From: Pecten maximus
Lineage: Eukaryota
Direction of reading: 5' to 3'
Length of the DNA stretch: 64,000 bases
Assembly (NCBI RefSeq): GCF_902652985.1
Contig: NC_047022.1
Span: 35,650,001-35,714,000, forward strand
Part shown: piece by piece, positions 26,681 to 60,100 of the stretch
How positions within the stretch are numbered: the stretch's first letter is position 1
How the letters are laid out: every line of letters starts with the position of its first letter
Made by a program: the position numbers and the translations under genes
The notes under the pieces: model-generated
Told to the model about the DNA's origin: nothing
Database searches by the model: none
Seen by the model: only the letters and a program-made list of their open reading frames with translations

Positions 26681-29133
26681 GATTAATTATTATTTCATAG
26701 ATTGTGTTTCTGTACATGATGGGAAGGCCGAGACATTAAATGAATGCCATTGTAGACAAGTGTAGTGAACTGGGAATGGATTGTACTAAAATCGTGAACA
26801 TGGCCAGTGATGGAGCATCTGTAATGACGGGAAAGGCAAATGGAGTTGGAGCTCGAGTCCGTGCTGATCACAGCCCACGTCTCCTTCAAGTCCACTGTGT
26901 TGCTCATAGACTTGCTCTAGCCGCTAGACAGGCCTGCAGAGACGTTCCACTTTTTGATGATTTTCAGAGAAGCCTTAAGTTGATTTATAGATACTTCCAC
27001 AATTCTGCTGTTCGTTACAACCAGCTCAGAGCAGTGGAGGCCCTTCTTCAGGATGACAACATGCGCTGTCTGTCATTGAAGGAACCTGCCAGTTCCCGTT
27101 GGCTCTCTCTTGAGGCTGCAGTGACAGCTATCTTAGATACATATCCAGCTCTACTTGTGACACTGGATAGTGATGCTGCGAAGGGTAGTACTGCTGGAAA
27201 TGCTGAGGCAAAAGGACTTCTTAATCGCATCAAGCCTGTGACCTTTGTACTCACCACTGCTTTTCTGAAGGATGTCCTGTCATGTGTTGGTAAACTCTCC
27301 AAGGTATTCCAGCGTGACCACGTGGATGTAGATACTGTTAATGTGATGGTGGATGCTACCCTTCAGAAACTGGAGTCTATAAAGACTGACAATGGACGAC
27401 ACCCCCAGGAGGTATATGACAAACTTCAGCAGCGTGATGGATATTATCAAGATGTAAAGATTCAGGACCGCCAGTCTATGCGGATTCAATTCCAGACAGA
27501 GGCCAACAAATACCTTGACAAGCTGTGTGAAAATCTTCGTGACAGATTTGAGCAGGACTCCTTGGGGAAGATACAGATGCTTAACATCATCCTCAATCCA
27601 GAATGCCTGCCATCCTCATTGACTGCAGTAACTGCCCATGGGAAAGAAGAGCTCCAGACTCTTGTTGATTTATATGGAGGGGAAGATCCACTGGATGATG
27701 GAGACCAACTGAAAGAGGACTTTGAACAATTCAAATGTGTTTTGAAATCACTCCGTGGGAAGTCTCTGAAAGACAGTTGTGTCCATATTGTTAGTAAATA
27801 CTCGGATGTATTTCCAGACTTCGCTATCCTCGCACAGATTCTTCTGGCCGCCCCTATGACATCTGTGGCATGTGAACGTGGATTTTCATCGCAAAATAGA
27901 CTAAAAACAAAAGCCAGGTCTTGTTTGAAACATGCTACTGTGACCAAACTCATTAGAATCTCGGAGGAAGGCCCCAGTGTGACAGACTTTGACCCCACTG
28001 TTAGCATCAGGAAGTTTGTGAAAACCAAACAGAGGAGGAAGTGAAATGGTGACAATGTGACTGAGGTCTAATAGAACAGCTAGTGTAACCTGTGTCTGCA
28101 ATTATCTTTTAAGTGTGACTGTGATATACTCTTATAAGTTAACTTATTTGTGAAATCCATATATCTTCCCTTAACTAACAGAGGAGGAAGTATAGTGAAA
28201 ATGTGACAGAGTTCTAATAGTGGGTAATAGAGCTATGCAACCTATGTCTGCAAGTGTTTTTTAAGTGTGACTGTGATATAATATAATATTTTATGATGTA
28301 AATGTTTGTAAACAGTGGCAAAATGTGAAATTCAAATATCTTTCCCTAACTACCTGGTAATTATAAATTTATGATCTAGCATTGTTACTATTGTATGATT
28401 TGGGAGTGTGACTTTCAATTTGTTAAATTACTGTATGTTATGGAAGTGTGACTGAGACAGAGAAATATAATTATATTAATAACATAAGGATGTCGACTAG
28501 TGCTGCAGGTTAAGTTTAGGATAAATGTAGAGTTTATTGTTGAAAGTGTTTGGTACATGTTGGTATATTTATTCAGAGAAAATACATATCACACCATTAA
28601 ATTATTTGTCAGTCTAAATGTTAAACATTGTTTGTTTGTTAATTTCTTATTGATCAATTTCAGTCATTTTCATTTCTTACTTCTTGATCATAACTTTTAA
28701 TTTCAATTGAAAGTTTGAAAAAGTCATGAAACTGTTGTAAAAGTAGAGGTATCGAATGTTTGATTTAAGACATGAAAATGACACAAATTCCTTCAATATT
28801 GTGCTAAAATCTTCTCCCATTGATGGACCAGCTCTAGATCTTCACAACCTGCTGTAAGGAAAAGTTCTTGATGTTTAGTTCAAGTCCAGCATATTACAGT
28901 ATTTGTAGTCTATTAGGTAAATTAAAAAAAAAAAAAAAAAAAAGATTAATACATGGATACAAACAATACAGACATTGTGCCAAAGTACGCGTTGACTTAA
29001 TCGTTTGATAAAAACTTGACACCTGACTTTTTGACATTCTATAATTTTGACTCTCAGGATTTGAATTTGACTCTCAGGATTTACAAGTCAAGGGTCACTG
29101 ACTCTTGACATTTTCCACCTACTGGATGCCCTG
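26681..29133 (+). mobile_element. Left-truncated hAT transposon
   Basis: Contains the transposase ORF, subterminal TTGACTCTCAGGATTT repeats (29047-29082) and right terminus ...CCTACTGGATGCCCTG (CAGGG-type TIR). Confidence 0.8.
26740..28044 (+). pseudogene. hAT transposase (ZNF862-like), N-terminally truncated, 434-aa open frame
   Basis: SDGASVMTG (catalytic D), HCVAHRLALA (CxxH), SRWLS and SVACERGFS (catalytic E, hATC). Homology extends upstream (INYYFIDCVSVHDGKAETL, from 26682) across a +1 frameshift at ~26739. The first catalytic D and DNA-binding domain are absent. Confidence 0.9.
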
Positions 29134-35055: not shown

Positions 35056-37233
35056 TCATTTCACTTCCTTGAATACAAAGCCACTGAACTGTCCTTGTTT
35101 GATGTTTGTGCCATTCAGTCCTTTTTCATTTGGCATGAAGGTAATGGTCATTCCCTCCTGTTGTTTTTGAACGACACCTCTATCACCATAGTAACTGACT
35201 GGGCCTTCCATCGCCATCAACAGAGTGTAACAAATTTCTCTTTTCATCATCAATGGAGGATCAATCTCCAGTGGGTAAGTCTTGGTGTAGCCATCTGTTT
35301 CAAGTTCAATGCTTTTTTGACACAACTGATGTTCACCATCTTCTAATATCTTCAATGCTATTTTATATGAAGCTTGAAACTGGCAGCTCCCATAGATCAG
35401 CAATTCATGCAACCTGACATTATTGGATAGCATGAATGAGATGGCATCAGCATTTCCACGAAAATAACCTTTGCCACTCTTCACCCCAGAAAATCTTTCA
35501 AAAACGATTCTTCTATCTCTTGGTTGATCTGGATGGTCAGCCTTCTTTGAAGTTAAGAATCGGAAATTTTCCAGAATTTGATCTTGTGTCAATATCTCCA
35601 TGTGAGAGACTTTGTCTGAAAAATATGATTGTTCCATTCTTGCAAATCGAATATATGGCAAAATATTGACCAGGATACGGCGCATATTTTCACCGCTAGC
35701 TTCTATCGAATCAGTTCTACATTTTTGATTTGCCCACTTAATAACAGCTTCAAATATGTCTTTTTCTTCCATATTGATTCTGTGGAGTTTCAAAATCTCT
35801 ATCAGGCTGGCCTCGGTCAGTTCCAAGAATCCTCTTGTACCAAACACAGCATAGGAGTGAAGAATGATATGCTCCAAGCACAGTTCTTTGACCTCATCTT
35901 GAACCCAGATACATGCATGCATTAAAACCCAGCATACCCTGTTAGTTGAAATCATGCTTTTTATTCGCTCGATGCGTTTTTGAGCAAGACTTTTTAAGTT
36001 ATACTTTTGAGCTGCGTACAGCATAGGAAAGCTGTCCATCAAGTCCACTTTGGCATCATCACAGTAAATAAACCTGTAGAGAAGAAATTGATCATACTAT
36101 AATAGTATTTAAACTGAGAATCCAACAACTAATATGAACTGATGTAGCATGTTATTTTCAATCATAAGTGGGTCAAAATGCCATAATGGTGAAATGACCT
36201 GGGATCAAAATGCTATTATGGTGAGTTTACTGAAATGACCTGGGGTCAAAATACCATTAAACCATTCTGGTGAAATGATCCCCACAGTTGATCTGGATAC
36301 AGTAAGTTCAACTTGAATCCCAGTAGGGGAACATGAGAATAATTTCTAAATAGGTGTTATGCACGAAAACTTTGATTGTTTAATCCTAATACAAACAACC
36401 ACTATGACAACCATCAGATGACCTTCATAAATATAACAGCTACTTAAATGAATCACCTTCTGGTACTGTATATGATTGATTGTGTCTCACTTGCTTCATT
36501 TACAATAGTTGTTCTTGAAGCTTTTAATAATTTGACAAATATTTGAGGAATTAATTTTGTTAAGATGCTTTAGGTAACACATGATAATGTTGAGCGAGTT
36601 ATAACATAATGTACTAATTACGATACACTCTAGCCTAGCTCCTACACAGACTGGTTCAATCCCTTAAAAACCCATACCTGAAACATGCAATCATAAATGA
36701 AAGTGTTCTCCTCTACATGCCTGCACAACCAAGACTAAGTAATAAAAACACATTTCCACTTTCCAGTACACACATAATTACAGTATGTGTGCAGGTATAA
36801 AGCAAAGTCTCATATAGGGAATAGATGTTGGTAGGTAACTGATGACAGCCCTTGTTAAACCTTTAAATTAAATTATGTAAAATGGAAGCAATATAAAAAA
36901 TATAAATACAAATTATGAAATGTTTTACATGGAAAAACAGAAAACAAAATACCAATATACTTACTGTAACATCAACTTGAAGACAATAGGGTCAATATCA
37001 GGAATTGTTATCATGCTATTTAGTTCCGCCATAGATCCCTCAAACATGGCAAAGAACACATCACTTCTGGCCATTAATAGTGATTTATGGGCCCCAATTC
37101 GTCGTTGGTTGTCTGGTGGTCCGACAATAAAGTGGACATCACAGCCGATTTCCTGTTCCAGGATGTAGCGGTTACATTGAACCAGGGTTTTACCATCTCT
37201 CCAGTCCTGAGGTCCATCTCCTCCAGCTGCCAT
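35056..37233 (-). CDS. BTB-BACK-PHR protein (BTBD2/3/6-like CUL3 adaptor), paralogue 1, 428 aa
   Basis: Exons 37233-36965 and 36073-35056, phase-2 GT-AG intron. BTB (CDVHFIVG, AHK, RSDVFFAMF, FIYCD, AAQKY), BACK (EKDIFEAVIKWA, PYIRF) and PHR (DAISF, IYGS, NGTNIKQGQF). Confidence 0.92.
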
Positions 37234-51529: not shown

Positions 51530-53086
51530 CTACACTTTTTCAAAGACAAGGCTACTGAATTGCCCTTGTTTGACATTTGTGCCATTCAGTCCTGCTTCAT
51601 TGACCATGAAAGAAATGGTCACACCGTCCTTGGCAATTGTTGTTTCCCCATGTTGTCCGCTATAGCTGGCTGGGCCTGTCATTTGCATCACGAGTGAATA
51701 GCGGACATCTTTCTTCACTAACACAGGAGGCACAATCTCTAGTGGATAGGTTTTGGTAGCGCCATTAGTCCTTAAGTCAAAATATTTTTCTGGTAGCTTA
51801 TGCTCATCTTCTTGAATGTTAAGTTTTATTCTATACAGAGCTTCATTCTTACAGCTCCCATAAACAAAAACCTCATGTAGCTTAGCATCATCAGAGAGAA
51901 TGAAGGAAATGGCATCAGCATTTCCACGCAAATATCCTTTACCACTCATGTTGCCTTTAAATCTGTCAAATACGAGTCTCCGGTCTCTTGGAGGTTCTGG
52001 TGGGTCAGCTCTTTTGGTGGTTAAAAATCGATAATGTGTCACAAGTTCTGAATCAGTTAGTATACCTTTAAGAGAGACCTTATCTGTGAAATAAGAGGCA
52101 TCCATCCTTGGAAAGCGAATATACGGTAGAATATTGTTCAGGACACTGCGAGTGTTTCTTGCATTGACCTCTAAATTCTGTCTCTTGATTCTTTCTACGC
52201 CCCATTTTTCAACTGCCTCAAATATCTTTTCTTCTTGCATATTGACTTTGTGGTGCTGAAGTATTTCGATCAGACATTCTTCTGAGAGGTCCATGAATCC
52301 ATCTGCTGAAAATACATTCAATGCATGAAGATATATATACTGTAGACACAGCTGTTTAGTTTCCTCTGCACGAAATAGAACTGCATTCATCAGAACAAAA
52401 CACACATTCTCCACCGACATCCCTGCCCTCATTCGCTGGTCGCATCGTGTAACAAGGCCCTGGATATTGTACTTCTGTGCAGCATATAGAAGGGGAAAAG
52501 CTTCACTCAAATCTATCCCTGTATCATCACAGTAAATGTACCTGAGGGATGAAAACTGAATTTTTAAACAATTTATCGTTGAATCTAAAATCAATATGGT
52601 ACATGTAAGATCATGGAATCATGTACTTAGAATTAACCAGTGAAAATTATTCAGTTTTACAGTGAAATAAAGCTGATATTTCTTTAAATTATGGTAAATA
52701 ACATTTCTTTGTACTTCATACTAAACCGACAATTAAAGATTCCCTGCTGTAAAGTTTACTGTACATAAAGTATTGATTAACCTATGATTAGAAAGTCAAA
52801 AATCTGATTATACTTACAGTAACATTTTCTTAAAAGTAAATGGATCAATGTCTGGAACTGTTATCAAGCTATCTGGCCCTGCCATAAGCCCTTCAAACAT
52901 GGCAAAGAACACATCGCTTCTAGCCATTAAAATGCATTTGTGAGCCCCAATACGTTTTTGGTTGTCTGGGGGTCCGACAATGAAGTGGATATCACAGCCA
53001 ATTTCCTGTTCCAGGATGTAGCGGTTACATTGTTTCAGTGTCTTGCCATTCCTCCAGTTTTGTTGCTCATTGATAAATTCAGCCAT
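51530..53086 (-). CDS. BTB-BACK-PHR protein (BTBD2/3/6-like), paralogue 2, 426 aa
   Basis: Exons 53086-52818 and 52541-51530. Same 269-nt first coding exon and intron position as paralogue 1, with the same BTB, BACK and PHR motifs. Confidence 0.92.
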
Positions 53087-54500: not shown

Positions 54501-54984
54501 GTAATTGGGTTTACATGTCTTAATTTGATGTTCAAGGGCATATTATCATGATTTCCATGACAGATTTCGACTTCTAAAAGAGAATTGAGCAACAACAGGT
54601 TTCGAAAGATGAATGTTGATGGAGACCACCGGAATGAAATGATAACTGGGGAAGCATCATTGTCTACATCATGAGCCCATTTAAAAAAGAAATCCTCGAC
54701 ATGGCTATTTACTCTAGTTTAGCTGCTACCCTAGTTCTCAGTTTAACAATGTAACGTAACGGATTTGACCTAGGGTTTCGTTTTTATGTCAGCACACTTC
54801 ATTGTTAGTGTAGTTATTAAGCAATACATTTGCATATCAAACATTAATGAGAATGGAAGTTTGTAATAAAAAAATTATCATATATGTTGTCTTGTACTAG
54901 AAAATGGAACAAGAAAGTAAGAATACAATACTTCTCTGAGATATTCAGACATTATGAGCGGCTAAAACCAAACGTTTAACTGAA

Positions 54985-55098
54985 AACTTTCCTTATCAGC
55001 CACACATATAAACGTTGGTTAAAAGAGCCATTCCTATCACCTTATCAGCTTACAGACATGCAGTGACCAAAATTGACTGACTGAGATAAAGTGCCACG
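54985..55098 (+). promoter_or_regulatory. Putative promoter of the secreted-protein gene (TATA plus GATA sites)
   Basis: TATAAA at 55007-55012; identical CCTTATCAGC at 54991 and 55040; AGATAA at 55084; strong Kozak GCCACGATGG. Confidence 0.45.
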
Positions 55099-57129
55099 AT
55101 GGCGTTTCTTCTTTTTATAACATATCTAACTTTATATTTGCAATTATCATTTGGATTTCTTTTTCAAGATTCTGCAGGTAGGATTATCCAACGTTACATG
55201 ATGCAATAGTCAAAATGTACATTATATCACGCTTCAAAATCACTCTTAGTTGTTAATTTTCACAAAACAAAGCTTGAAAATGTGTGAACCATGTATAAAC
55301 ATTACTTTTGGATTTCAAATACAGACCTGGACTTTCGGAATGGAACGTTGATTGGCACGGTTCAAGACAGCAGAGTTGTAAAAGTTTCAGGATGTGCAGC
55401 TAGTCGCAAACATCCGGGTATCTTGTACATCCACAACGACCATCATCACGCAGGCTCCACCGTATTTGCAATAGACGCAACGACAGCTCAAGTGGTCGGG
55501 AGTATTACTTTGACTAATGCCGTGAATGCTGATTGGGAAGACATAGCTGTCGGTCCTTGTCCGTTCCGAGCGGGATTAACATGTATATTTATAGGTGACA
55601 TCGGCACGGACAAAGGACACCCGGCAGCGGATAATGTGTATTTGATTGCAGAGCCAGATTCGGTTAAAGGAAACCACAATATAACGTACGAGAAGATACT
55701 ACAATACAGGTACGTGTATATTATGCATTTATGGCCCTGGATGCAGGGTAATATGAAGTTTTTTTTACTCGAAGGTACCATATTTCCCGAGGGCTTGCCC
55801 GAGGGAAATATGAGAGCTGAAGTTAAACGAACCTTCATATTACCCTACATCCAGGGCCATATATTGTTTATTATACCGAAATAATCAGTAATGATGCTAC
55901 TCAAAAATAAACTGAAGATACGAGATATCATTTTTATCACAAACCCCTGTGATCCCGGTCGCTCAATTGATACGATTCCAAGTCAATGTGTTATTGACAG
56001 TTTCTTTTAGAAACTCTTGGAAACAGTTGGCGTGTACATTTGTTGATATTTTCGTGTTCTGAGCAATCTTATTTTGCAGAATTTTATCTACATTTGTATT
56101 TCTGCCTCTTCGACTGCAGGAAAACGTTTGCGTTTCTGTTCGTCTGCCATTTGTAAATAACTGCAGACAACTCCTCGCAACAGAATGTGGGGGTCGCCAT
56201 GGGAGCATGCGGTCCAGAGAGATATGATATTTATCGCCCTGGCTCACGCGCCTTAGGGAGATATGATGTTTTTTACTAATAACAGGCATTTTTATAAACA
56301 TGAGGTATACAAATTAAGGTACTCCTGCTATTCTTAAGTTTTCACATACACAGTGATCCTCGTCTCAAAGGAATGTTATTGACTATATATATGTATATAT
56401 ATATACTCTGCATCATTTTGTAATAATTATTTTGCAATCATTTTGTTTTGTTCCCTTTTGCGATATTTTGCAGGCTTCCTTGTGAAACATGAAAAGACAA
56501 CTATTTTGTTTTATTTTGATGATCGCAAATATTTCATACAGACTTATCTGTTACAGTAAAGCTGAATACTGTTTAATTTATTATAGTTTGATTGATAACC
56601 AATGTTATATATGCCGTTCATTGTATGCTAAAGTAAAAGACCAAATCATAATTTTGAAGATTGACTTTATAATTACTTTTTTACCTGTTTATTAGTTCCG
56701 ACGAGCTAGGTTCTGACACTCTCATGGTGGACTCTAATGGCGAGCTTTACATGATAGCAATACAAAGAGGGGGTAATGGCGGATATTACCACATTCCTAA
56801 AAGCGCTTGGAATACAAACAACAGAGTTTCCTATAACAGCAAGTGGTCACATGGATTTGAACACAGGTCACGAAAAAGATCCGGTGGCCGGTGACATTTC
56901 TCCGGACGGAACGGCTTTGCTTGTGAAAACCCAACAACACATGTTGCTATGGAGATTTGATGTAAAACATTGGGCAGATATGTTCCAACGTCAACCTCAG
57001 ATGGTTCCCTATACCTACGTTTGGCAAGATGAGGCTGTGTGCTGGAACCATGATGGCACGGGATACTACACCATTCCCGAGGGCACTAACCCACCGTTAC
57101 ATTTTTATCCAAGCACTAAATCAGGTTAG
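55099..57129 (+). CDS. Secreted protein resembling a bacterial uncharacterised beta-propeller family (SG.AASR..PG / DWEDIA / GDIG / DISPDG); one +1 frameshift in exon 3
   Basis: Exons 55099-55177 (signal peptide MAFLLFITYLTLYLQLSFG), 55325-55709 and 56696-57129, GT-AG. Total 898 nt, one base over frame; about 298 aa if corrected. Confidence 0.75.
55730..56313 (+). mobile_element. Hairpin-ended element in intron 2 of the secreted-protein gene
   Basis: 29-bp arms at 55730-55758 / 55833-55861 (1 mismatch), inner hairpin CATATTTCCC..GGGAAATATG, degenerate IR TTTATTATACC / GGTATACAAA. Confidence 0.55.
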
Positions 57130-60100
57130 AGGATTAAATCATGGATCAATATACAATACAATTTCAATTTATATAGTTGTGATGTATTGTTATATTTTTT
57201 GACCTATTTTGTGCTGCTACCGTCGTCTCCTTGGTATCAACACTTTAGGCCCCTCAGCATCACTGACGAGAACGAAACAGCTTTATGGCGCAGTTTAATT
57301 AATTATAGGCTTTACTGTAACAGATTTACAGTTTGTATTCAAAGGTCTTATATCTTATGTATTCAAATGTGTACAATCCGTTGGGATTGCAGTTGGTAGA
57401 ATCTTCTGGTGGACTGTTGTTCCAAGGTTTCCTGTTATCAGCATGATACGCTTTTATTCATTTGGAAAACGGCACGGTTCATAAAAATACACATTTGTTA
57501 TAAGCAATTGACAATTACGAAATGTATTGAATTACAGAGATGTTGCACCTCCCCCGTCCATAGTTTGACATGTCTTTAGACCTATCTAGAGTTAATTCCC
57601 TCCGACGCCTCCTACGTTTCAACACTTGATACTATTATTACAATTACTCTAACTCAAAATGTGAAGGTGCTACTATGTCATATATAATATTGTACTCTGA
57701 AGGCAAACGATAGAAGGGTTGCACCGTATAAATGAGCAACCACCTTTAAAGGAAAATGGTGGATTGTCATGTTAAGCTCTCTTAACCTGTATTGCGCAAT
57801 ACCAATAATTAATTGAATGTGAGTGAGTAGTATATGTTATCTAGTTTCTAACATTGTTAGATGTTTATAATTTCATGAAATAAAAATTGTTTGAACTGCT
57901 CTTTGAACAAGACACTTTTTATTTTTTTTGGTTAAATACAATTTTATTTGCCTAGACATTTATACACAATACAATGGACTGTCTGGAGATAGGCAGCTCC
58001 AGCTACAGTCCATAATACAAAAATATTCTCAATCTGTTGTCCTTCACTCATCACGTCTGTTTTATATATATTTCACACACTCAATTTCACTTTAATCACA
58101 TATATACTTTATTATTATGTCATATATTATATCTCCTACATGTTGAATATATAGACCTTATTATAAATATAAATATCTTAAACAAGACAGATTTTAAACT
58201 TGACTACCATTTCATATCTTAGCAGGTAAGCACTATTATATTCCCAGATATCCAGCACGCTGTACAAATTACTTTGACCAAGTTAAAATAAATTGATTAT
58301 GGAATACCTGTAGGTCTTTTCGATGATTGGATTAAGATAATTTTCCATATGACTTGGGATATCTAAACGGAAGTGTAGGGCGGTAGAGTCGACGTTCTCT
58401 GATGGAGACCATAGCCGGTAATAACTAACAATCACAGGCTGTTTCCCGGTGGTAATCCTTCCATTTCTTCAATCATAACTTGCTTCCGCAAATTCATATT
58501 CCTTACGTTGTCACATATGTTTTGTTATACATCTTAAAAAACCTGAGAAGGATAGTGACGAGAAAGCAGTACTAGTAACTTATGTATTTTGACAAGAACT
58601 CATAAATAGAAACTTACCTAATATAGACGATTAGTACCATATTATATGTTCAAATATGAAAACACTCAGGAATACTATCTACTGGATTATATATTCCATA
58701 TTACAGTTCGGACAGGTACAATTTCATCAAACGGTAAATAAAGCTCATTTATGTCCTGTAACGCGATATGTTATAAAGTCAAGTATAAGGTATTGTAACC
58801 TTTGTAATATTTAAGGAGCTAAATAAGATATGGAGTACTGTATGATGACACTTCACAATATACACGATGTATTAGTGCATAGTAGCAGTATAATAAAGTG
58901 GTATACTACATAGTTTTAATGAAGATAATGATATAAAATTAAAATCAATAAAGTCAAGTCAAAATATGAACAAAATTATCACATCCAGAGGGTAAGAATC
59001 TTCAGCTTCATCACCGAAAATCCATGAAATACCGCGTTTTCAAAATTAGAGTCAATTAATAGACATATCAATGGGCATCGAATACGTCTGTCGTCATTAT
59101 AACAAAGGGAAATATGACTTTCTGAAGCATTTATATGTGTTAACGTGTCAACAAGATGATGCATATTTGTATTAGATGAATTCAAAGAAAATGAATAACA
59201 TATTTCAATAGAAAGGGAAATTATACCTGAGTGGATCGTTGATGACTTGCACAGCGGTGAATGTTAGAATGATAGTTAATATATATCAAAGCAATATGTA
59301 TAACCAGATGTTACTATCAGAAAATGAAAAACAATGTCGTTAATGAATATTCATATGATGTGTATTGACATAAATGATCATTTCATTTGTGAGTATCTAC
59401 TGTAATTACAACATGCCACAATATTGATACACACATAAAATAATTTATTGCTAAAGTCATTAATTAGATACAGAAACACAAGCAGTGGTATACAAGGGAA
59501 TTACTACAGACAGATGACGAGTTAGGTGAAGGGACAAAGACGTATGAGAAACAAATGAGAGAGTATGATTTAACAGAAGTACGAGAAGTAAGTACTAGTT
59601 TAGTATTAAGGTTCAAATGATTTTTCAACTCGTGCAAATAGGTAAAAAAAAAACCAGAAGACCAGTCAATTTCAAGTACTGTTCAAAGATTGGCCAGTGT
59701 TCAAGTGATATATTATCATTATGATTGTTGTAATATCCCAGAGCGCTAATTAACAGAATACATGTACATATGTTTGTTGTGTTAAGGTAATATATTCGTT
59801 TTAGAAGTCTGCGTTTTTTTTCAAAGGTCATGCTATGCATATACAGTCATTAAAAAAGATTTTAATTTTCAGTTCATATAGGTGGAACATTGTAGTTAAC
59901 GACTTTTGCAATGTACGTTTGTGATTTGGGATACAGTGAAGATACTTAAATAATAACAAATTAGTATCGAACATCAAGGTAACGAAGATGCCGAAATTAT
60001 GATTCTTTAATAACCACGTGGCGGCAATTATCCAAATGGCATCCATTGGTATATTCTAGCACGATATAAATACATTGTATCCGCAAACACAGATAACACC

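What the first reader, a model, noticed from the sequence alone, without database searches (positions are those of the whole stretch)
55099..57129. Intron-containing secreted gene with a bacterial-type beta-propeller signature: horizontal-transfer candidate
Seen: a signal-peptide exon and two GT-AG introns, followed by the ordered motifs SGCAASRKHPGILYIHND, VFAID, DWEDIAVGP, IGDIG, EP, TLMVDSNGELY, AGDISPDG, QDEAVCW and TIPEG. Recalled knowledge: this motif series characterises a poorly studied family of secreted proteins of Actinobacteria and Bacteroidetes (SdiA-regulated / phytase-like propellers), and I know no vertebrate or insect counterpart. Inference: a bacterial gene domesticated in molluscs or lophotrochozoans that gained introns and a GATA/TATA promoter. 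Introns and flanking animal genes exclude contamination.
Basis: partly seen in the sequence, partly recalled or inferred. Interest (0 to 1): 0.75.

Follow-up and report, generated by a model that had tools for sequence, protein, structure and literature searches.

The report
Bacterial-origin secreted propeller gene in scallop
This is a real, expressed three-exon scallop gene for a secreted five-bladed propeller protein whose family occurs in molluscs, one brachiopod and many bacteria, so it is best read as an ancient bacterial gene captured by an early animal lineage.

Summary
A three-exon gene runs from the ATG at 55099 to the stop at 57127-57129. All nine motifs are present in the stated order. 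RNA contigs from two studies confirm both GT-AG introns.

The frameshift in exon 3 looks like an assembly artefact. All four runs laid (two DNA, two RNA) have one base fewer at 56827-56830, which restores a 298-codon frame. The public model for this locus (220 aa, P0218) is truncated at that spot.

The gene belongs to a family with at least eight loci in this genome, and paralogues share both intron positions. Named animal relatives are molluscs (chiton, gastropods, bivalves) plus one brachiopod, Lingula. No other animal phylum appeared in any list. Bacteria hold thousands of clusters, and Symbiodiniaceae carry a separate two-domain form.

The animal sequences form one clade (SH-aLRT 100). The donor is unresolved, and an AU test does not reject grouping the animals with the dinoflagellates (p 0.09).

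The predicted fold is a five-bladed propeller, closest to E. coli YjiK (Z 21.8). There is no Pfam membership, and the biochemical function is unknown.

I found no paper on this family.

The parts
54991..55049 (+). Two identical decamers (54991-55000 and 55040-55049) with a GATA core on the minus strand, flanking TATAAA at 55007-55012. This is a candidate promoter region and was not tested.
   Evidence: the decamer occurs 2 times in the window, both here. The expected count is 0.14, and 1 of 100 shuffles reached 2. TATAAA was read. The RNA contig starts at 55082, but a contig cannot define a transcription start.
55082..55177 (+). Exon 1: a short 5' UTR plus the coding sequence from the ATG at 55099. 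It encodes a 26-residue hydrophobic leader that looks like a signal peptide.
   Evidence: X6 record 24 covers 55082-55174 (table 8).
55178..55324 (+). Intron 1, 147 nt, GT..AG, phase 1.
   Evidence: table 5: a joint skipping 147 nt in X6 and X10. The same position and phase occur in the C5 paralogue.
55325..55709 (+). Exon 2: blades 1 and 2 and part of blade 3. It carries the motifs SGCAAS, HND followed by HHH, VFAID, DWEDIAVGPC, IGDIG and EP.
   Evidence: It is 127 of 127 identical to P0218 and 109 of 127 identical to each of the Mizuhopecten and Argopecten orthologues.
55710..56695 (+). Intron 2, 986 nt, GT..AG, phase 2. It holds high-copy repeats and a 68-nt-arm inverted repeat at 55727-55864.
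   Evidence: table 5 shows a joint skipping 986 nt in X6 and X10, and table 2 shows depth in the thousands over 55656-56327 in the DNA runs. One search found the inverted repeat. The same intron position and phase occur in the C5 and C17 paralogues.
56696..57129 (+). Exon 3 coding part: the rest of blade 3 and blades 4 and 5. It carries the motifs TLMVDSNGELY, AGDISPDG, QDEAVCW and TIPEG, with a TAG stop at 57127-57129.
   Evidence: Paralogues have this exon as one open frame of 170-188 aa.
56827..56830 (+). One surplus base in the window, in the run T-T-T-C. It breaks the frame and is absent from every run laid.
   Evidence: table 4: one base left out at 56827 in X4, X6 and X10 (4 contigs, full depth) and at 56830 in X1 (1 contig, full depth).
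57130..57905 (+). 3' UTR, with AATAAA at 57879-57884.
   Evidence: table 8: X6 record 24 is 1690 nt long, of which 1185 nt are laid up to 57400. AATAAA was read.

Best explanation
The locus is an intact, transcribed, three-exon gene for a secreted protein of about 298 aa that folds as a five-bladed beta-propeller.

It belongs to a gene family found in molluscs and a brachiopod. An early lophotrochozoan ancestor most likely acquired that family from a bacterium by horizontal transfer. The family then gained spliceosomal introns and a eukaryotic signal peptide, and it duplicated repeatedly, leaving at least eight loci in this genome. The frameshift in the window, and the truncated 220-aa public model, come from one surplus base in the assembly.

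Mechanism (inferred, not shown): each blade's innermost strand begins with a conserved Ser, Asp or Glu. These are SG in blade 1, DWED in blade 2, D/E-x-LMV in blade 3, GDIS in blade 4 and D/G-EA in blade 5. This is inferred to put carboxylates at the mouth of the central channel, the usual site for a bound divalent cation and a ligand. I therefore expect an extracellular, metal-dependent binding or hydrolytic protein that acts on a microbial or dietary substrate.
For: Gene reality:
- Both introns and the UTRs are covered by RNA contigs from two studies.
- The flanks carry animal BTB-BACK-PHR genes and transposons.
- The window lies at 35.65 Mb of contig C8 in a 918-Mb genome.

Artefactual frameshift:
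- 4 of 4 runs lack one base at 56827 or 56830.
- The orthologues P0201 (299 aa) and P0206 (295 aa) are open through this point.

Family in this genome:
- There are 28 exon-level matches on C5, C8, C16, C17, C19 and C2049.
- Intron 2 has the same position and phase in the C8, C5 and C17 genes, and intron 1 in the C8 and C5 genes.

Distribution:
- 35 of the 44 rows above 250 bits carry an organism name, and all 35 are molluscs.
- In the cluster look-ups of unlabelled tree rows, 11 of the 12 queried clusters that returned an organism name were molluscs; the twelfth, P0106, was a Myxococcales bacterium.
- Lingula anatina is the only other named animal.
- The profile search found 9275 clusters at E<=1e-3 and 4575 at E<=1e-10. 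Named bacteria span Myxococcota, Bacteroidota, KSB1, Calditrichota, Krumholzibacteriota, Gemmatimonadota and Acidobacteriota.

Phylogeny:
- The animal rows form one side of a branch: support 100 with 45 of 128 rows, and SH-aLRT 100 with branch length 0.73 and 30 of 85 rows.
- Exon 2 is 41 of 100 identical to a KSB1 protein. That matches its identity to its own C5 paralogue, 51 of 123.

Fold:
- The AF2 model of the orthologue has pLDDT 90 and pTM 0.88.
- The best structural match is YjiK 3qqz, with Z 21.8, rmsd 2.9 and 225 residues aligned.

Extracellular setting in bacteria:
- Many bacterial homologues carry T9SS sorting domains (PF18962) or lipoprotein-type leaders.
Against: - The trees are unrooted and the bacterial backbone is poorly resolved. 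In one search the sister group is Myxococcota-like, while searches give a polytomy. So 'nested inside bacteria' and the identity of the donor are not shown.
- The AU test does not reject a tree that joins the molluscs with the dinoflagellates (delta lnL 32.1, p-AU 0.0935).
- Absence from other animal phyla rests on lists capped at 120-150 rows and on records that happen to carry names. P0059 and P0345 sit at the base of the animal clade and are of unknown origin.
- No biochemical evidence exists. The carboxylate ring was read from the alignment and the strand list, not from coordinates.
- No Pfam or NCBIfam family hits this protein.
- hhalign against a bona fide PF06977 protein gave a probability of 5%.
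- Bacterial gene neighbourhoods gave no recurring partner.
Confidence: 0.8

Rival explanations
1. The family is an old eukaryotic gene inherited vertically. It was lost in nearly all lineages and kept in molluscs, brachiopods and dinoflagellates.
For: The AU test does not reject joining the molluscs and dinoflagellates in one clade (p 0.0935). Within the animal clade the order is unknown rows, then Lingula, then molluscs, which looks like a species tree.
Against: No named hit from any other animal phylum, fungus, plant or holozoan appears or 68 (120 rows each), or among the look-ups's 150 rows. The free trees place the dinoflagellates among bacterial two-domain proteins, apart from the animals. 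Bacteria hold thousands of clusters across many phyla. This reading needs dozens of independent losses.
Confidence: 0.08
2. The locus is a pseudogene. The frameshift in exon 3 is real and the transcript is non-functional.
For: The window itself carries the extra base. The public 220-aa model P0218 ends at the resulting stop.
Against: All 5 contigs from the 4 runs covering the site lack one base, at full depth (table 4). Both halves of exon 3 stay 82-83% identical to intact orthologues. The exonic differences among runs are 3 silent and 5 conservative or semi-conservative changes, with no further stops or indels.
Confidence: 0.05
3. Two or more independent transfers, or animal-to-animal transfer, produced the brachiopod and mollusc genes, rather than one acquisition in a common ancestor.
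For: Only one brachiopod gene was seen. No annelid, nemertean or phoronid relative was seen. The dinoflagellates show that the family can enter eukaryotes more than once.
Against: Lingula and the molluscs share one clade with support 100 against all the bacteria sampled. Lingula is 41-47% identical to molluscs and 35-42% identical to the best bacteria.
Confidence: 0.07

Closest known systems
YjiK of E. coli, C-terminal domain (PDB 3qqz; Pfam PF06977 'SdiA-regulated')
   Same: It is the best structural match: Z 21.8, rmsd 2.9 A, 225 of 243 residues aligned. It also has the highest TM-score in Foldseek, 0.58/0.70. It is the best sequence hit of the family profile in the PDB, with E 0.016 over blades 3-5, and acidic residues align at the start of the inner strands. 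The ESM Atlas lists PF06977 clusters as the nearest clusters that carry a Pfam family.
   Different: Sequence identity is 15%. No PF06977 hit was found for this protein's pieces at E<=1, and only 1 of 66 family members hit it, at E 0.022. hhalign of the family profile against a Myxococcota PF06977 protein gave a probability of 5%. YjiK's own function is unknown. In the passages I read of PMC1084347 it is described only as a conserved region of outer-membrane proteins.
Pfam PF13449 'Phytase-like' (esterase-like activity of phytase)
   Same: 14 of 66 family members, mostly bacterial, match it weakly, with a best E of 2.2e-5. One bacterial relative carries it in precomputed Pfam (P0263).
   Different: The window's protein pieces and the scallop orthologue P0201 do not match it. 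No activity is known for either family.
Bacterial or plant-type glutaminyl cyclases (PDB 3mbr, 3nok)
   Same: These are the second and third structural matches, with Z 19.7 and 18.4 over 214-219 residues. That these cyclases are five-bladed is recalled knowledge.
   Different: Identity is 9-10% and there is no sequence-level signal. The cyclase catalytic residues were not compared.
Documented bacteria-to-animal gene transfers that gained introns and expanded into families
   Same: The signature is the same: chromosomal integration, spliceosomal introns, a eukaryotic signal peptide, transcription, a patchy animal distribution and rich bacterial diversity.
   Different: Here the product has no known activity and the donor is unresolved. 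The acquisition appears to predate the split of molluscs and brachiopods.

Membership tests
Unnamed bacterial/lophotrochozoan five-bladed propeller family (no Pfam entry) | Ordered motif series: SG.A.S, HND, DWED..G, G(D/E)xG, EP, (D/E)xLMVD, GDIS.DG, (G/D)EA..W, EG. | tested here: met
   Searches show the motifs in the window. The invariant and near-invariant columns of the 66-row alignment A3 fall on these motifs.
Unnamed bacterial/lophotrochozoan five-bladed propeller family (no Pfam entry) | Significant profile similarity to both animal and bacterial members. | tested here: met
   The exon-2 profile found 4575 clusters at E<=1e-10. Exon 2 is 41 of 100 identical to a KSB1 protein.
Unnamed bacterial/lophotrochozoan five-bladed propeller family (no Pfam entry) | Five-bladed beta-propeller fold. 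| tested here: met
   This was tested on the orthologue P0201, which is 86% identical over exon 2, not on the joined window protein. The model has pLDDT 90. My reading of its strand list gives five four-stranded blades closed by the N-terminal strand. The top match has Z 21.8.
Pfam PF06977 SdiA-regulated | Match to the family HMM at or above its gathering score. | tested here: not met
   One search found no hit at E<=1. One search found 1 of 66 relatives at E 0.022. One search gave hhalign probability 5%.
Pfam PF06977 SdiA-regulated | Same fold as the solved member YjiK. | tested here: met
   Z 21.8, rmsd 2.9, 225 residues aligned. E 0.016.
Pfam PF13449 Phytase-like | Match to the family HMM. 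| tested here: not met
   One search found no hit for the window pieces. One search found 14 of 66 relatives at E<=0.1, and P0201 was not among them.
Animal gene of bacterial origin (horizontal transfer) | Integrated in a host chromosome among host genes, not a contaminant. | tested here: met
   One search places the window on C8 at 35.65 Mb. One search shows BTB-BACK-PHR genes, a reverse transcriptase and a hAT transposase in the window. In one search, DNA contigs of two studies span the exon-intron borders.
Animal gene of bacterial origin (horizontal transfer) | Spliceosomal introns and transcription. | tested here: met
   tables 5 and 8: two joints with GT..AG ends in two RNA studies.
Animal gene of bacterial origin (horizontal transfer) | Restricted distribution in animals and a wide one in bacteria. 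| tested here: met
   the only named animals are molluscs and Lingula. The limit is that the lists are capped and many rows carry no name.
Animal gene of bacterial origin (horizontal transfer) | Animal clade nested within bacterial diversity in a rooted tree, with an identified donor. | tested here: inconclusive
   The animal clade has support 100, but the trees are unrooted and the sister group changes. The AU test of animals plus dinoflagellates gave p 0.0935.

The most novel reading that the evidence does not exclude
A secreted propeller from a bacterium was captured before molluscs and brachiopods diverged. The donor would be from the FCB group (KSB1, Calditrichota, Bacteroidota) or Myxococcota. 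The gene was kept for more than half a billion years and diversified into a lineage-specific extracellular family. Forms include single- and double-propeller proteins, sushi-domain fusions and a membrane-anchored version. The pectinid branch has a conserved His-rich HND-HHH loop that hints at a changed metal site. On this reading the family is an undescribed lophotrochozoan innovation in microbial recognition or extracellular digestion.
Probability: 0.4. Interest if true: 0.7.

Novelty: new member of a known kind. Interest (0 to 1): 0.55.

Why it matters
Well-supported ancient transfers of bacterial genes into animals are few, and each one shows how foreign genes become animal genes. This case has introns shared by old paralogues, a eukaryotic leader peptide and repeated duplication. 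It is retained across chitons, gastropods, bivalves and a brachiopod. It also draws attention to a very large bacterial protein family (thousands of clusters) that has no Pfam entry and no known activity, and the animal copies offer a tractable way to study it. On the practical side, the public model of this locus is truncated by an assembly error and should be corrected.

Tried and rejected
Contamination was rejected on the chromosome context, the introns and the DNA contigs that span exon-intron borders.

A real pseudogene was rejected because 4 of 4 runs lack the extra base.

Pfam and NCBIfam scans of the three coding pieces gave nothing apart from a chance-level AvrE_T3Es hit at E 0.24.

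Foldseek against the PDB ranked generic WD40 propellers first by E-value, with TM of about 0.4. Only 3qqz had a good TM, and VIA-align resolved this.

hhalign of the family profile against a PF06977 protein from a Myxococcota genome failed, with probability 5%.

Same-strand neighbours of 74 bacterial loci gave 125 candidate neighbours. The largest recurring group was 4 loci from closely related genomes, and none of the neighbours was a family member. So there is no operon clue.

Six paper searches found nothing on this family or on any of five locus names. Passages I read in PMC11460185 and PMC10795318 concern other matters. Supplementary files were not opened, and tables of large horizontal-transfer screens could list this family without my seeing it.

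I could not fetch the Lingula, chiton or limpet loci, so intron positions in other species and the origin of P0059 and P0345 remain unchecked.

The later trees did not keep it, and KSB1 and Calditrichota proteins are more similar. The genome-contig scan used a pattern that requires the G-x-C cysteine, so it is biased towards the Myxococcota subtype.

Rows dropped before the trees:
- Near-identical cluster members (17 ids).
- Hand thinning of molluscs, Myxococcota loci and unnamed bacteria. The lists are in those scripts.
Full report
THE OBSERVATION. The sequence at 55099-57129 (+) reads as a three-exon gene.
- Exon 1 (ATG at 55099 to 55177) encodes a 26-residue hydrophobic leader.
- Exon 2 (55325-55709) encodes 127 full codons with SGCAASRKHPGILYIHND, VFAID, DWEDIAVGP, IGDIG and EP.
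- Exon 3 (56696-57129) carries TLMVDSNGELY, AGDISPDG, QDEAVCW and TIPEG, and ends in TAG.

Both introns begin GT and end AG. In the window as written, exon 3 switches frame between TLMVDSNGELY and AGDISPDG, and the first frame runs into a TGA at 56892-56894.

READS. I laid contigs of two DNA runs (X1, X4; different studies) and two RNA runs (X6, X10; different studies) on 54900-57400.
- Both RNA runs contain the two joints: one skips 147 nt and one skips 986 nt, both with GT..AG ends.
- One 1690-nt RNA contig runs from 55082 through all three exons and beyond 57400. By length it would end near 57905, about 20 nt after an AATAAA at 57879-57884. A contig cannot prove an end.
- At the frameshift, every run has one base fewer than the window: at 56827 in X4, X6 and X10 and at 56830 in X1. 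That is 5 contigs in all, each at full depth (table 4).
- With one base fewer the three exons add up to 897 nt, which is 298 codons plus a stop.
- The two shorter forms differ from each other by a single base at one position. The assembly looks like a merge of two alleles.
- Other exonic differences among the runs are 3 silent and 5 amino-acid changes, with no further indels or stops.
- RNA in a library is not proof of function, and the contigs give no expression level.

PUBLIC ANNOTATION. The protein search returned P0218, 'uncharacterized protein LOC117333344 [Pecten maximus]', 220 aa. It is 127 of 127 identical to exon 2. By eye it equals exon 1, exon 2 and exon 3 in the first frame up to the premature stop. 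The public model is therefore truncated by the surplus base. The orthologues are open through that point: Mizuhopecten yessoensis (P0201, 299 aa) and Argopecten irradians (P0206, 295 aa). They are 109 of 127 identical over exon 2, and 78 of 95 and 73 of 94 identical over the last piece. These database proteins served as stand-ins.

CONTEXT. The window is G000:C8:35650001-35714000 in a 918-Mb assembly. It also holds two BTB-BACK-PHR genes, a reverse transcriptase and a hAT transposase. Contamination is excluded.

A FAMILY WITH OLD, SHARED INTRONS. A profile of 13 relatives found 28 exon-level matches in this genome. They lie on C8, C5, C19, C17, C16 and the unplaced C2049. The C16 matches are at 1.20-1.23 Mb (two tandem genes), 5.55 Mb and 22.66-22.67 Mb. 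That makes at least eight loci, 35-44% identical to the window gene.
- Intron 2 interrupts the same codon in phase 2 (…[YF] | S/R …) in the C8, C5 and C17 genes.
- Intron 1 lies in phase 1 at the same aligned residue in the C8 and C5 genes.
- In the trees, the C5 gene groups with gastropod and other bivalve sequences, away from the window's branch.
- The shared introns are therefore probably older than much of mollusc diversification. This is an inference.

WHO HAS IT. A profile of the exon-2 pieces was run against 1.84 billion representative proteins. It gave 9275 hits at E<=1e-3, 4575 at E<=1e-10 and 37 at E<=1e-30.

With a 13-sequence full-length profile, 35 of the 44 rows above 250 bits carry an organism name, and all 35 are molluscs:
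- a chiton, Liolophura;
- gastropods Lottia, Patella, Haliotis, Gigantopelta, Batillaria and Babylonia;
- bivalves from oysters, scallops, pearl oyster, ark clam, unionids, Mercenaria, Mactra and Dreissena.

Below that the named rows are 8 bacteria and 2 partial mollusc entries. Cluster look-ups of unlabelled rows named 11 further queried clusters as molluscs (Haliotis, Mya, Biomphalaria, Mactra, Ylistrum, Magallana) and one, P0106, as a Myxococcales bacterium. The Haliotis entries include double-propeller proteins and a sushi-domain fusion, and the Mya protein has a membrane-anchor-like leader.

The unnamed row P0059 sat at the edge of the mollusc group, so I searched with it. That search found Lingula anatina LOC106178750, a brachiopod gene. 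A search with the Lingula protein returned only Lingula itself, molluscs and then bacteria among the named rows. No annelid, arthropod, vertebrate, cnidarian, fungal or plant name appeared anywhere. No cephalopod appeared either. These lists are capped at 120-150 rows and many rows have no name, so this is 'not seen', not 'absent'.

One other eukaryotic group does carry the family: Symbiodinium and Effrenium, as a 671-aa two-domain protein.

Named bacteria include Myxococcota, Bacteroidota, KSB1, Calditrichota, Krumholzibacteriota, Ignavibacteria, Gemmatimonadota and Acidobacteriota. Many carry T9SS sorting domains or lipoprotein-like leaders, which means they are extracellular.

TREES.
- FastTree on 243 domain rows put all the molluscs in one clade, with a Myxococcota-like sister group.
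- IQ-TREE (quick, LG+C20) on 115 rows kept the molluscs plus P0059 on one side of a branch with support 97. The rest was left as an unresolved three-way split.
- After I added Lingula and the new bacterial hits, FastTree (128 rows) and IQ-TREE (85 rows) both gave one animal clade with support 100. The stem length was 0.73.
- Inside that clade the order is (P0059, P0345), then Lingula, then the molluscs (support 81-93).
- The dinoflagellates sit elsewhere, among bacterial two-domain proteins.

Two results cut against a tidy story. The trees are unrooted and the bacterial backbone is weak, so neither 'nested in bacteria' nor a donor is demonstrated. In addition, an AU test of molluscs plus dinoflagellates as one clade gave delta lnL 32.1 and p 0.0935, which is not rejected.

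The case for transfer therefore rests mainly on distribution (thousands of bacterial clusters against two or three eukaryotic lineages) and on similarity. Exon 2 is as close to a KSB1 protein (41 of 100) as to its own paralogue on C5 (51 of 123).

FOLD AND KNOWN FAMILIES. An AlphaFold2 model of the orthologue P0201, built with a 66-row alignment, has pLDDT 90 and pTM 0.88. Its strand list reads as five four-stranded blades, closed by the N-terminal strand.

An exhaustive structural comparison put the C-terminal domain of E. coli YjiK (3qqz) first, with Z 21.8, rmsd 2.9 and 225 residues aligned. Two bacterial glutaminyl cyclases followed (Z 19.7 and 18.4), and then NHL and glycosidase propellers at about Z 13-15. 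The family profile's best PDB sequence hit is also 3qqz, at a marginal E of 0.016. The ESM Atlas places the protein in a mollusc-dominated cluster next to bacterial clusters. The nearest clusters with a Pfam family carry PF06977 or PF13449.

At sequence level, membership fails:
- No Pfam or NCBIfam hit for the window's pieces.
- PF13449 in 14 of 66 relatives, and PF06977 in 1 of 66.
- hhalign probability 5% against a genuine PF06977 protein.

HOW IT MAY WORK. Shown: it has a leader peptide, it is transcribed and spliced, and its relatives in bacteria and animals are extracellular. Inferred: the invariant and near-invariant columns fall at the start of the innermost strand of each blade and in the adjoining loops. 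In P0201 numbering these are S47/G48, N63/D64, D95-W96-E97-D98, E135-P136, D220, E266 and E282. That would place a ring of carboxylates at one mouth of the central channel, the usual seat of a divalent cation and substrate in small propellers. I could not inspect coordinates.

I commit to an extracellular metal-dependent binding or hydrolytic protein acting on microbial or dietary material, at roughly 35% confidence for that mechanism. The pectinid branch has HND followed by three histidines where most relatives have HNDSG. That may alter the metal site, but this is speculation. Bacterial neighbourhoods gave no clue.

PROMOTER. A decamer with a GATA core on the minus strand occurs twice, at 54991 and 55040, and nowhere else in the window. 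The expected count is 0.14, and 1 of 100 shuffles reached 2. The two copies bracket TATAAA at 55007-55012, upstream of the first transcribed base seen (55082). This is suggestive only.

NOVELTY. Six literature searches and passages from three papers turned up nothing on this family in animals. Supplementary tables were not available. The gene is annotated only as 'uncharacterized'. I class it as a new member of a known kind: an ancient bacterium-to-animal transfer.

LIMITS.
- The lists are capped.
- The trees used quick searches.
- The structure is that of an orthologue.

Noticed in passing
window 55717-56330 (intron 2): High-copy repeats. DNA-run word depth rises from about 17-55 to thousands here, with many partial contigs and loose ends. 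A 68-nt-arm inverted repeat, 78% complementary with a 2-nt spacer, lies at 55727-55864.
   Followed up: partly
window 35059-36048 (-) and 51533-52594 (-): Two large open frames with BACK and PHR domains, which look like paralogous BTB-BACK-PHR genes, lie about 16 kb apart upstream of the finding.
   Followed up: no
window 19378-20547 (+) and 26740-28041 (+): A reverse-transcriptase open frame and a hAT-type transposase open frame with a dimerisation domain.
   Followed up: no
P0003 cluster (Symbiodinium / Effrenium, 657-671 aa): Dinoflagellates carry a two-propeller version of the same family. In the free trees it groups with bacterial two-domain lipoprotein-like proteins, which suggests a second entry into eukaryotes. 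The AU test did not reject a common clade with the molluscs.
   Followed up: partly
P0059 and P0345 (unnamed transcript-sized contigs): Two unnamed proteins branch at the base of the animal clade, outside Lingula plus the molluscs. They lack the G-P-C cysteine, as bacterial members do. They may come from a further animal phylum.
   Followed up: partly
window 57250-57257 and 57252-57335: A variable homopolymer or indel site in the 3' UTR differs among the DNA contigs. A short stretch at 57252-57335 has raised depth in all runs, which suggests a small repeat inside the UTR (tables 2 and 4).
   Followed up: no
G000:C16:1203162-1226304: Two tandem family members about 13 kb apart have more exons than the window gene. 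Their propeller is split into at least four or five pieces.
   Followed up: no
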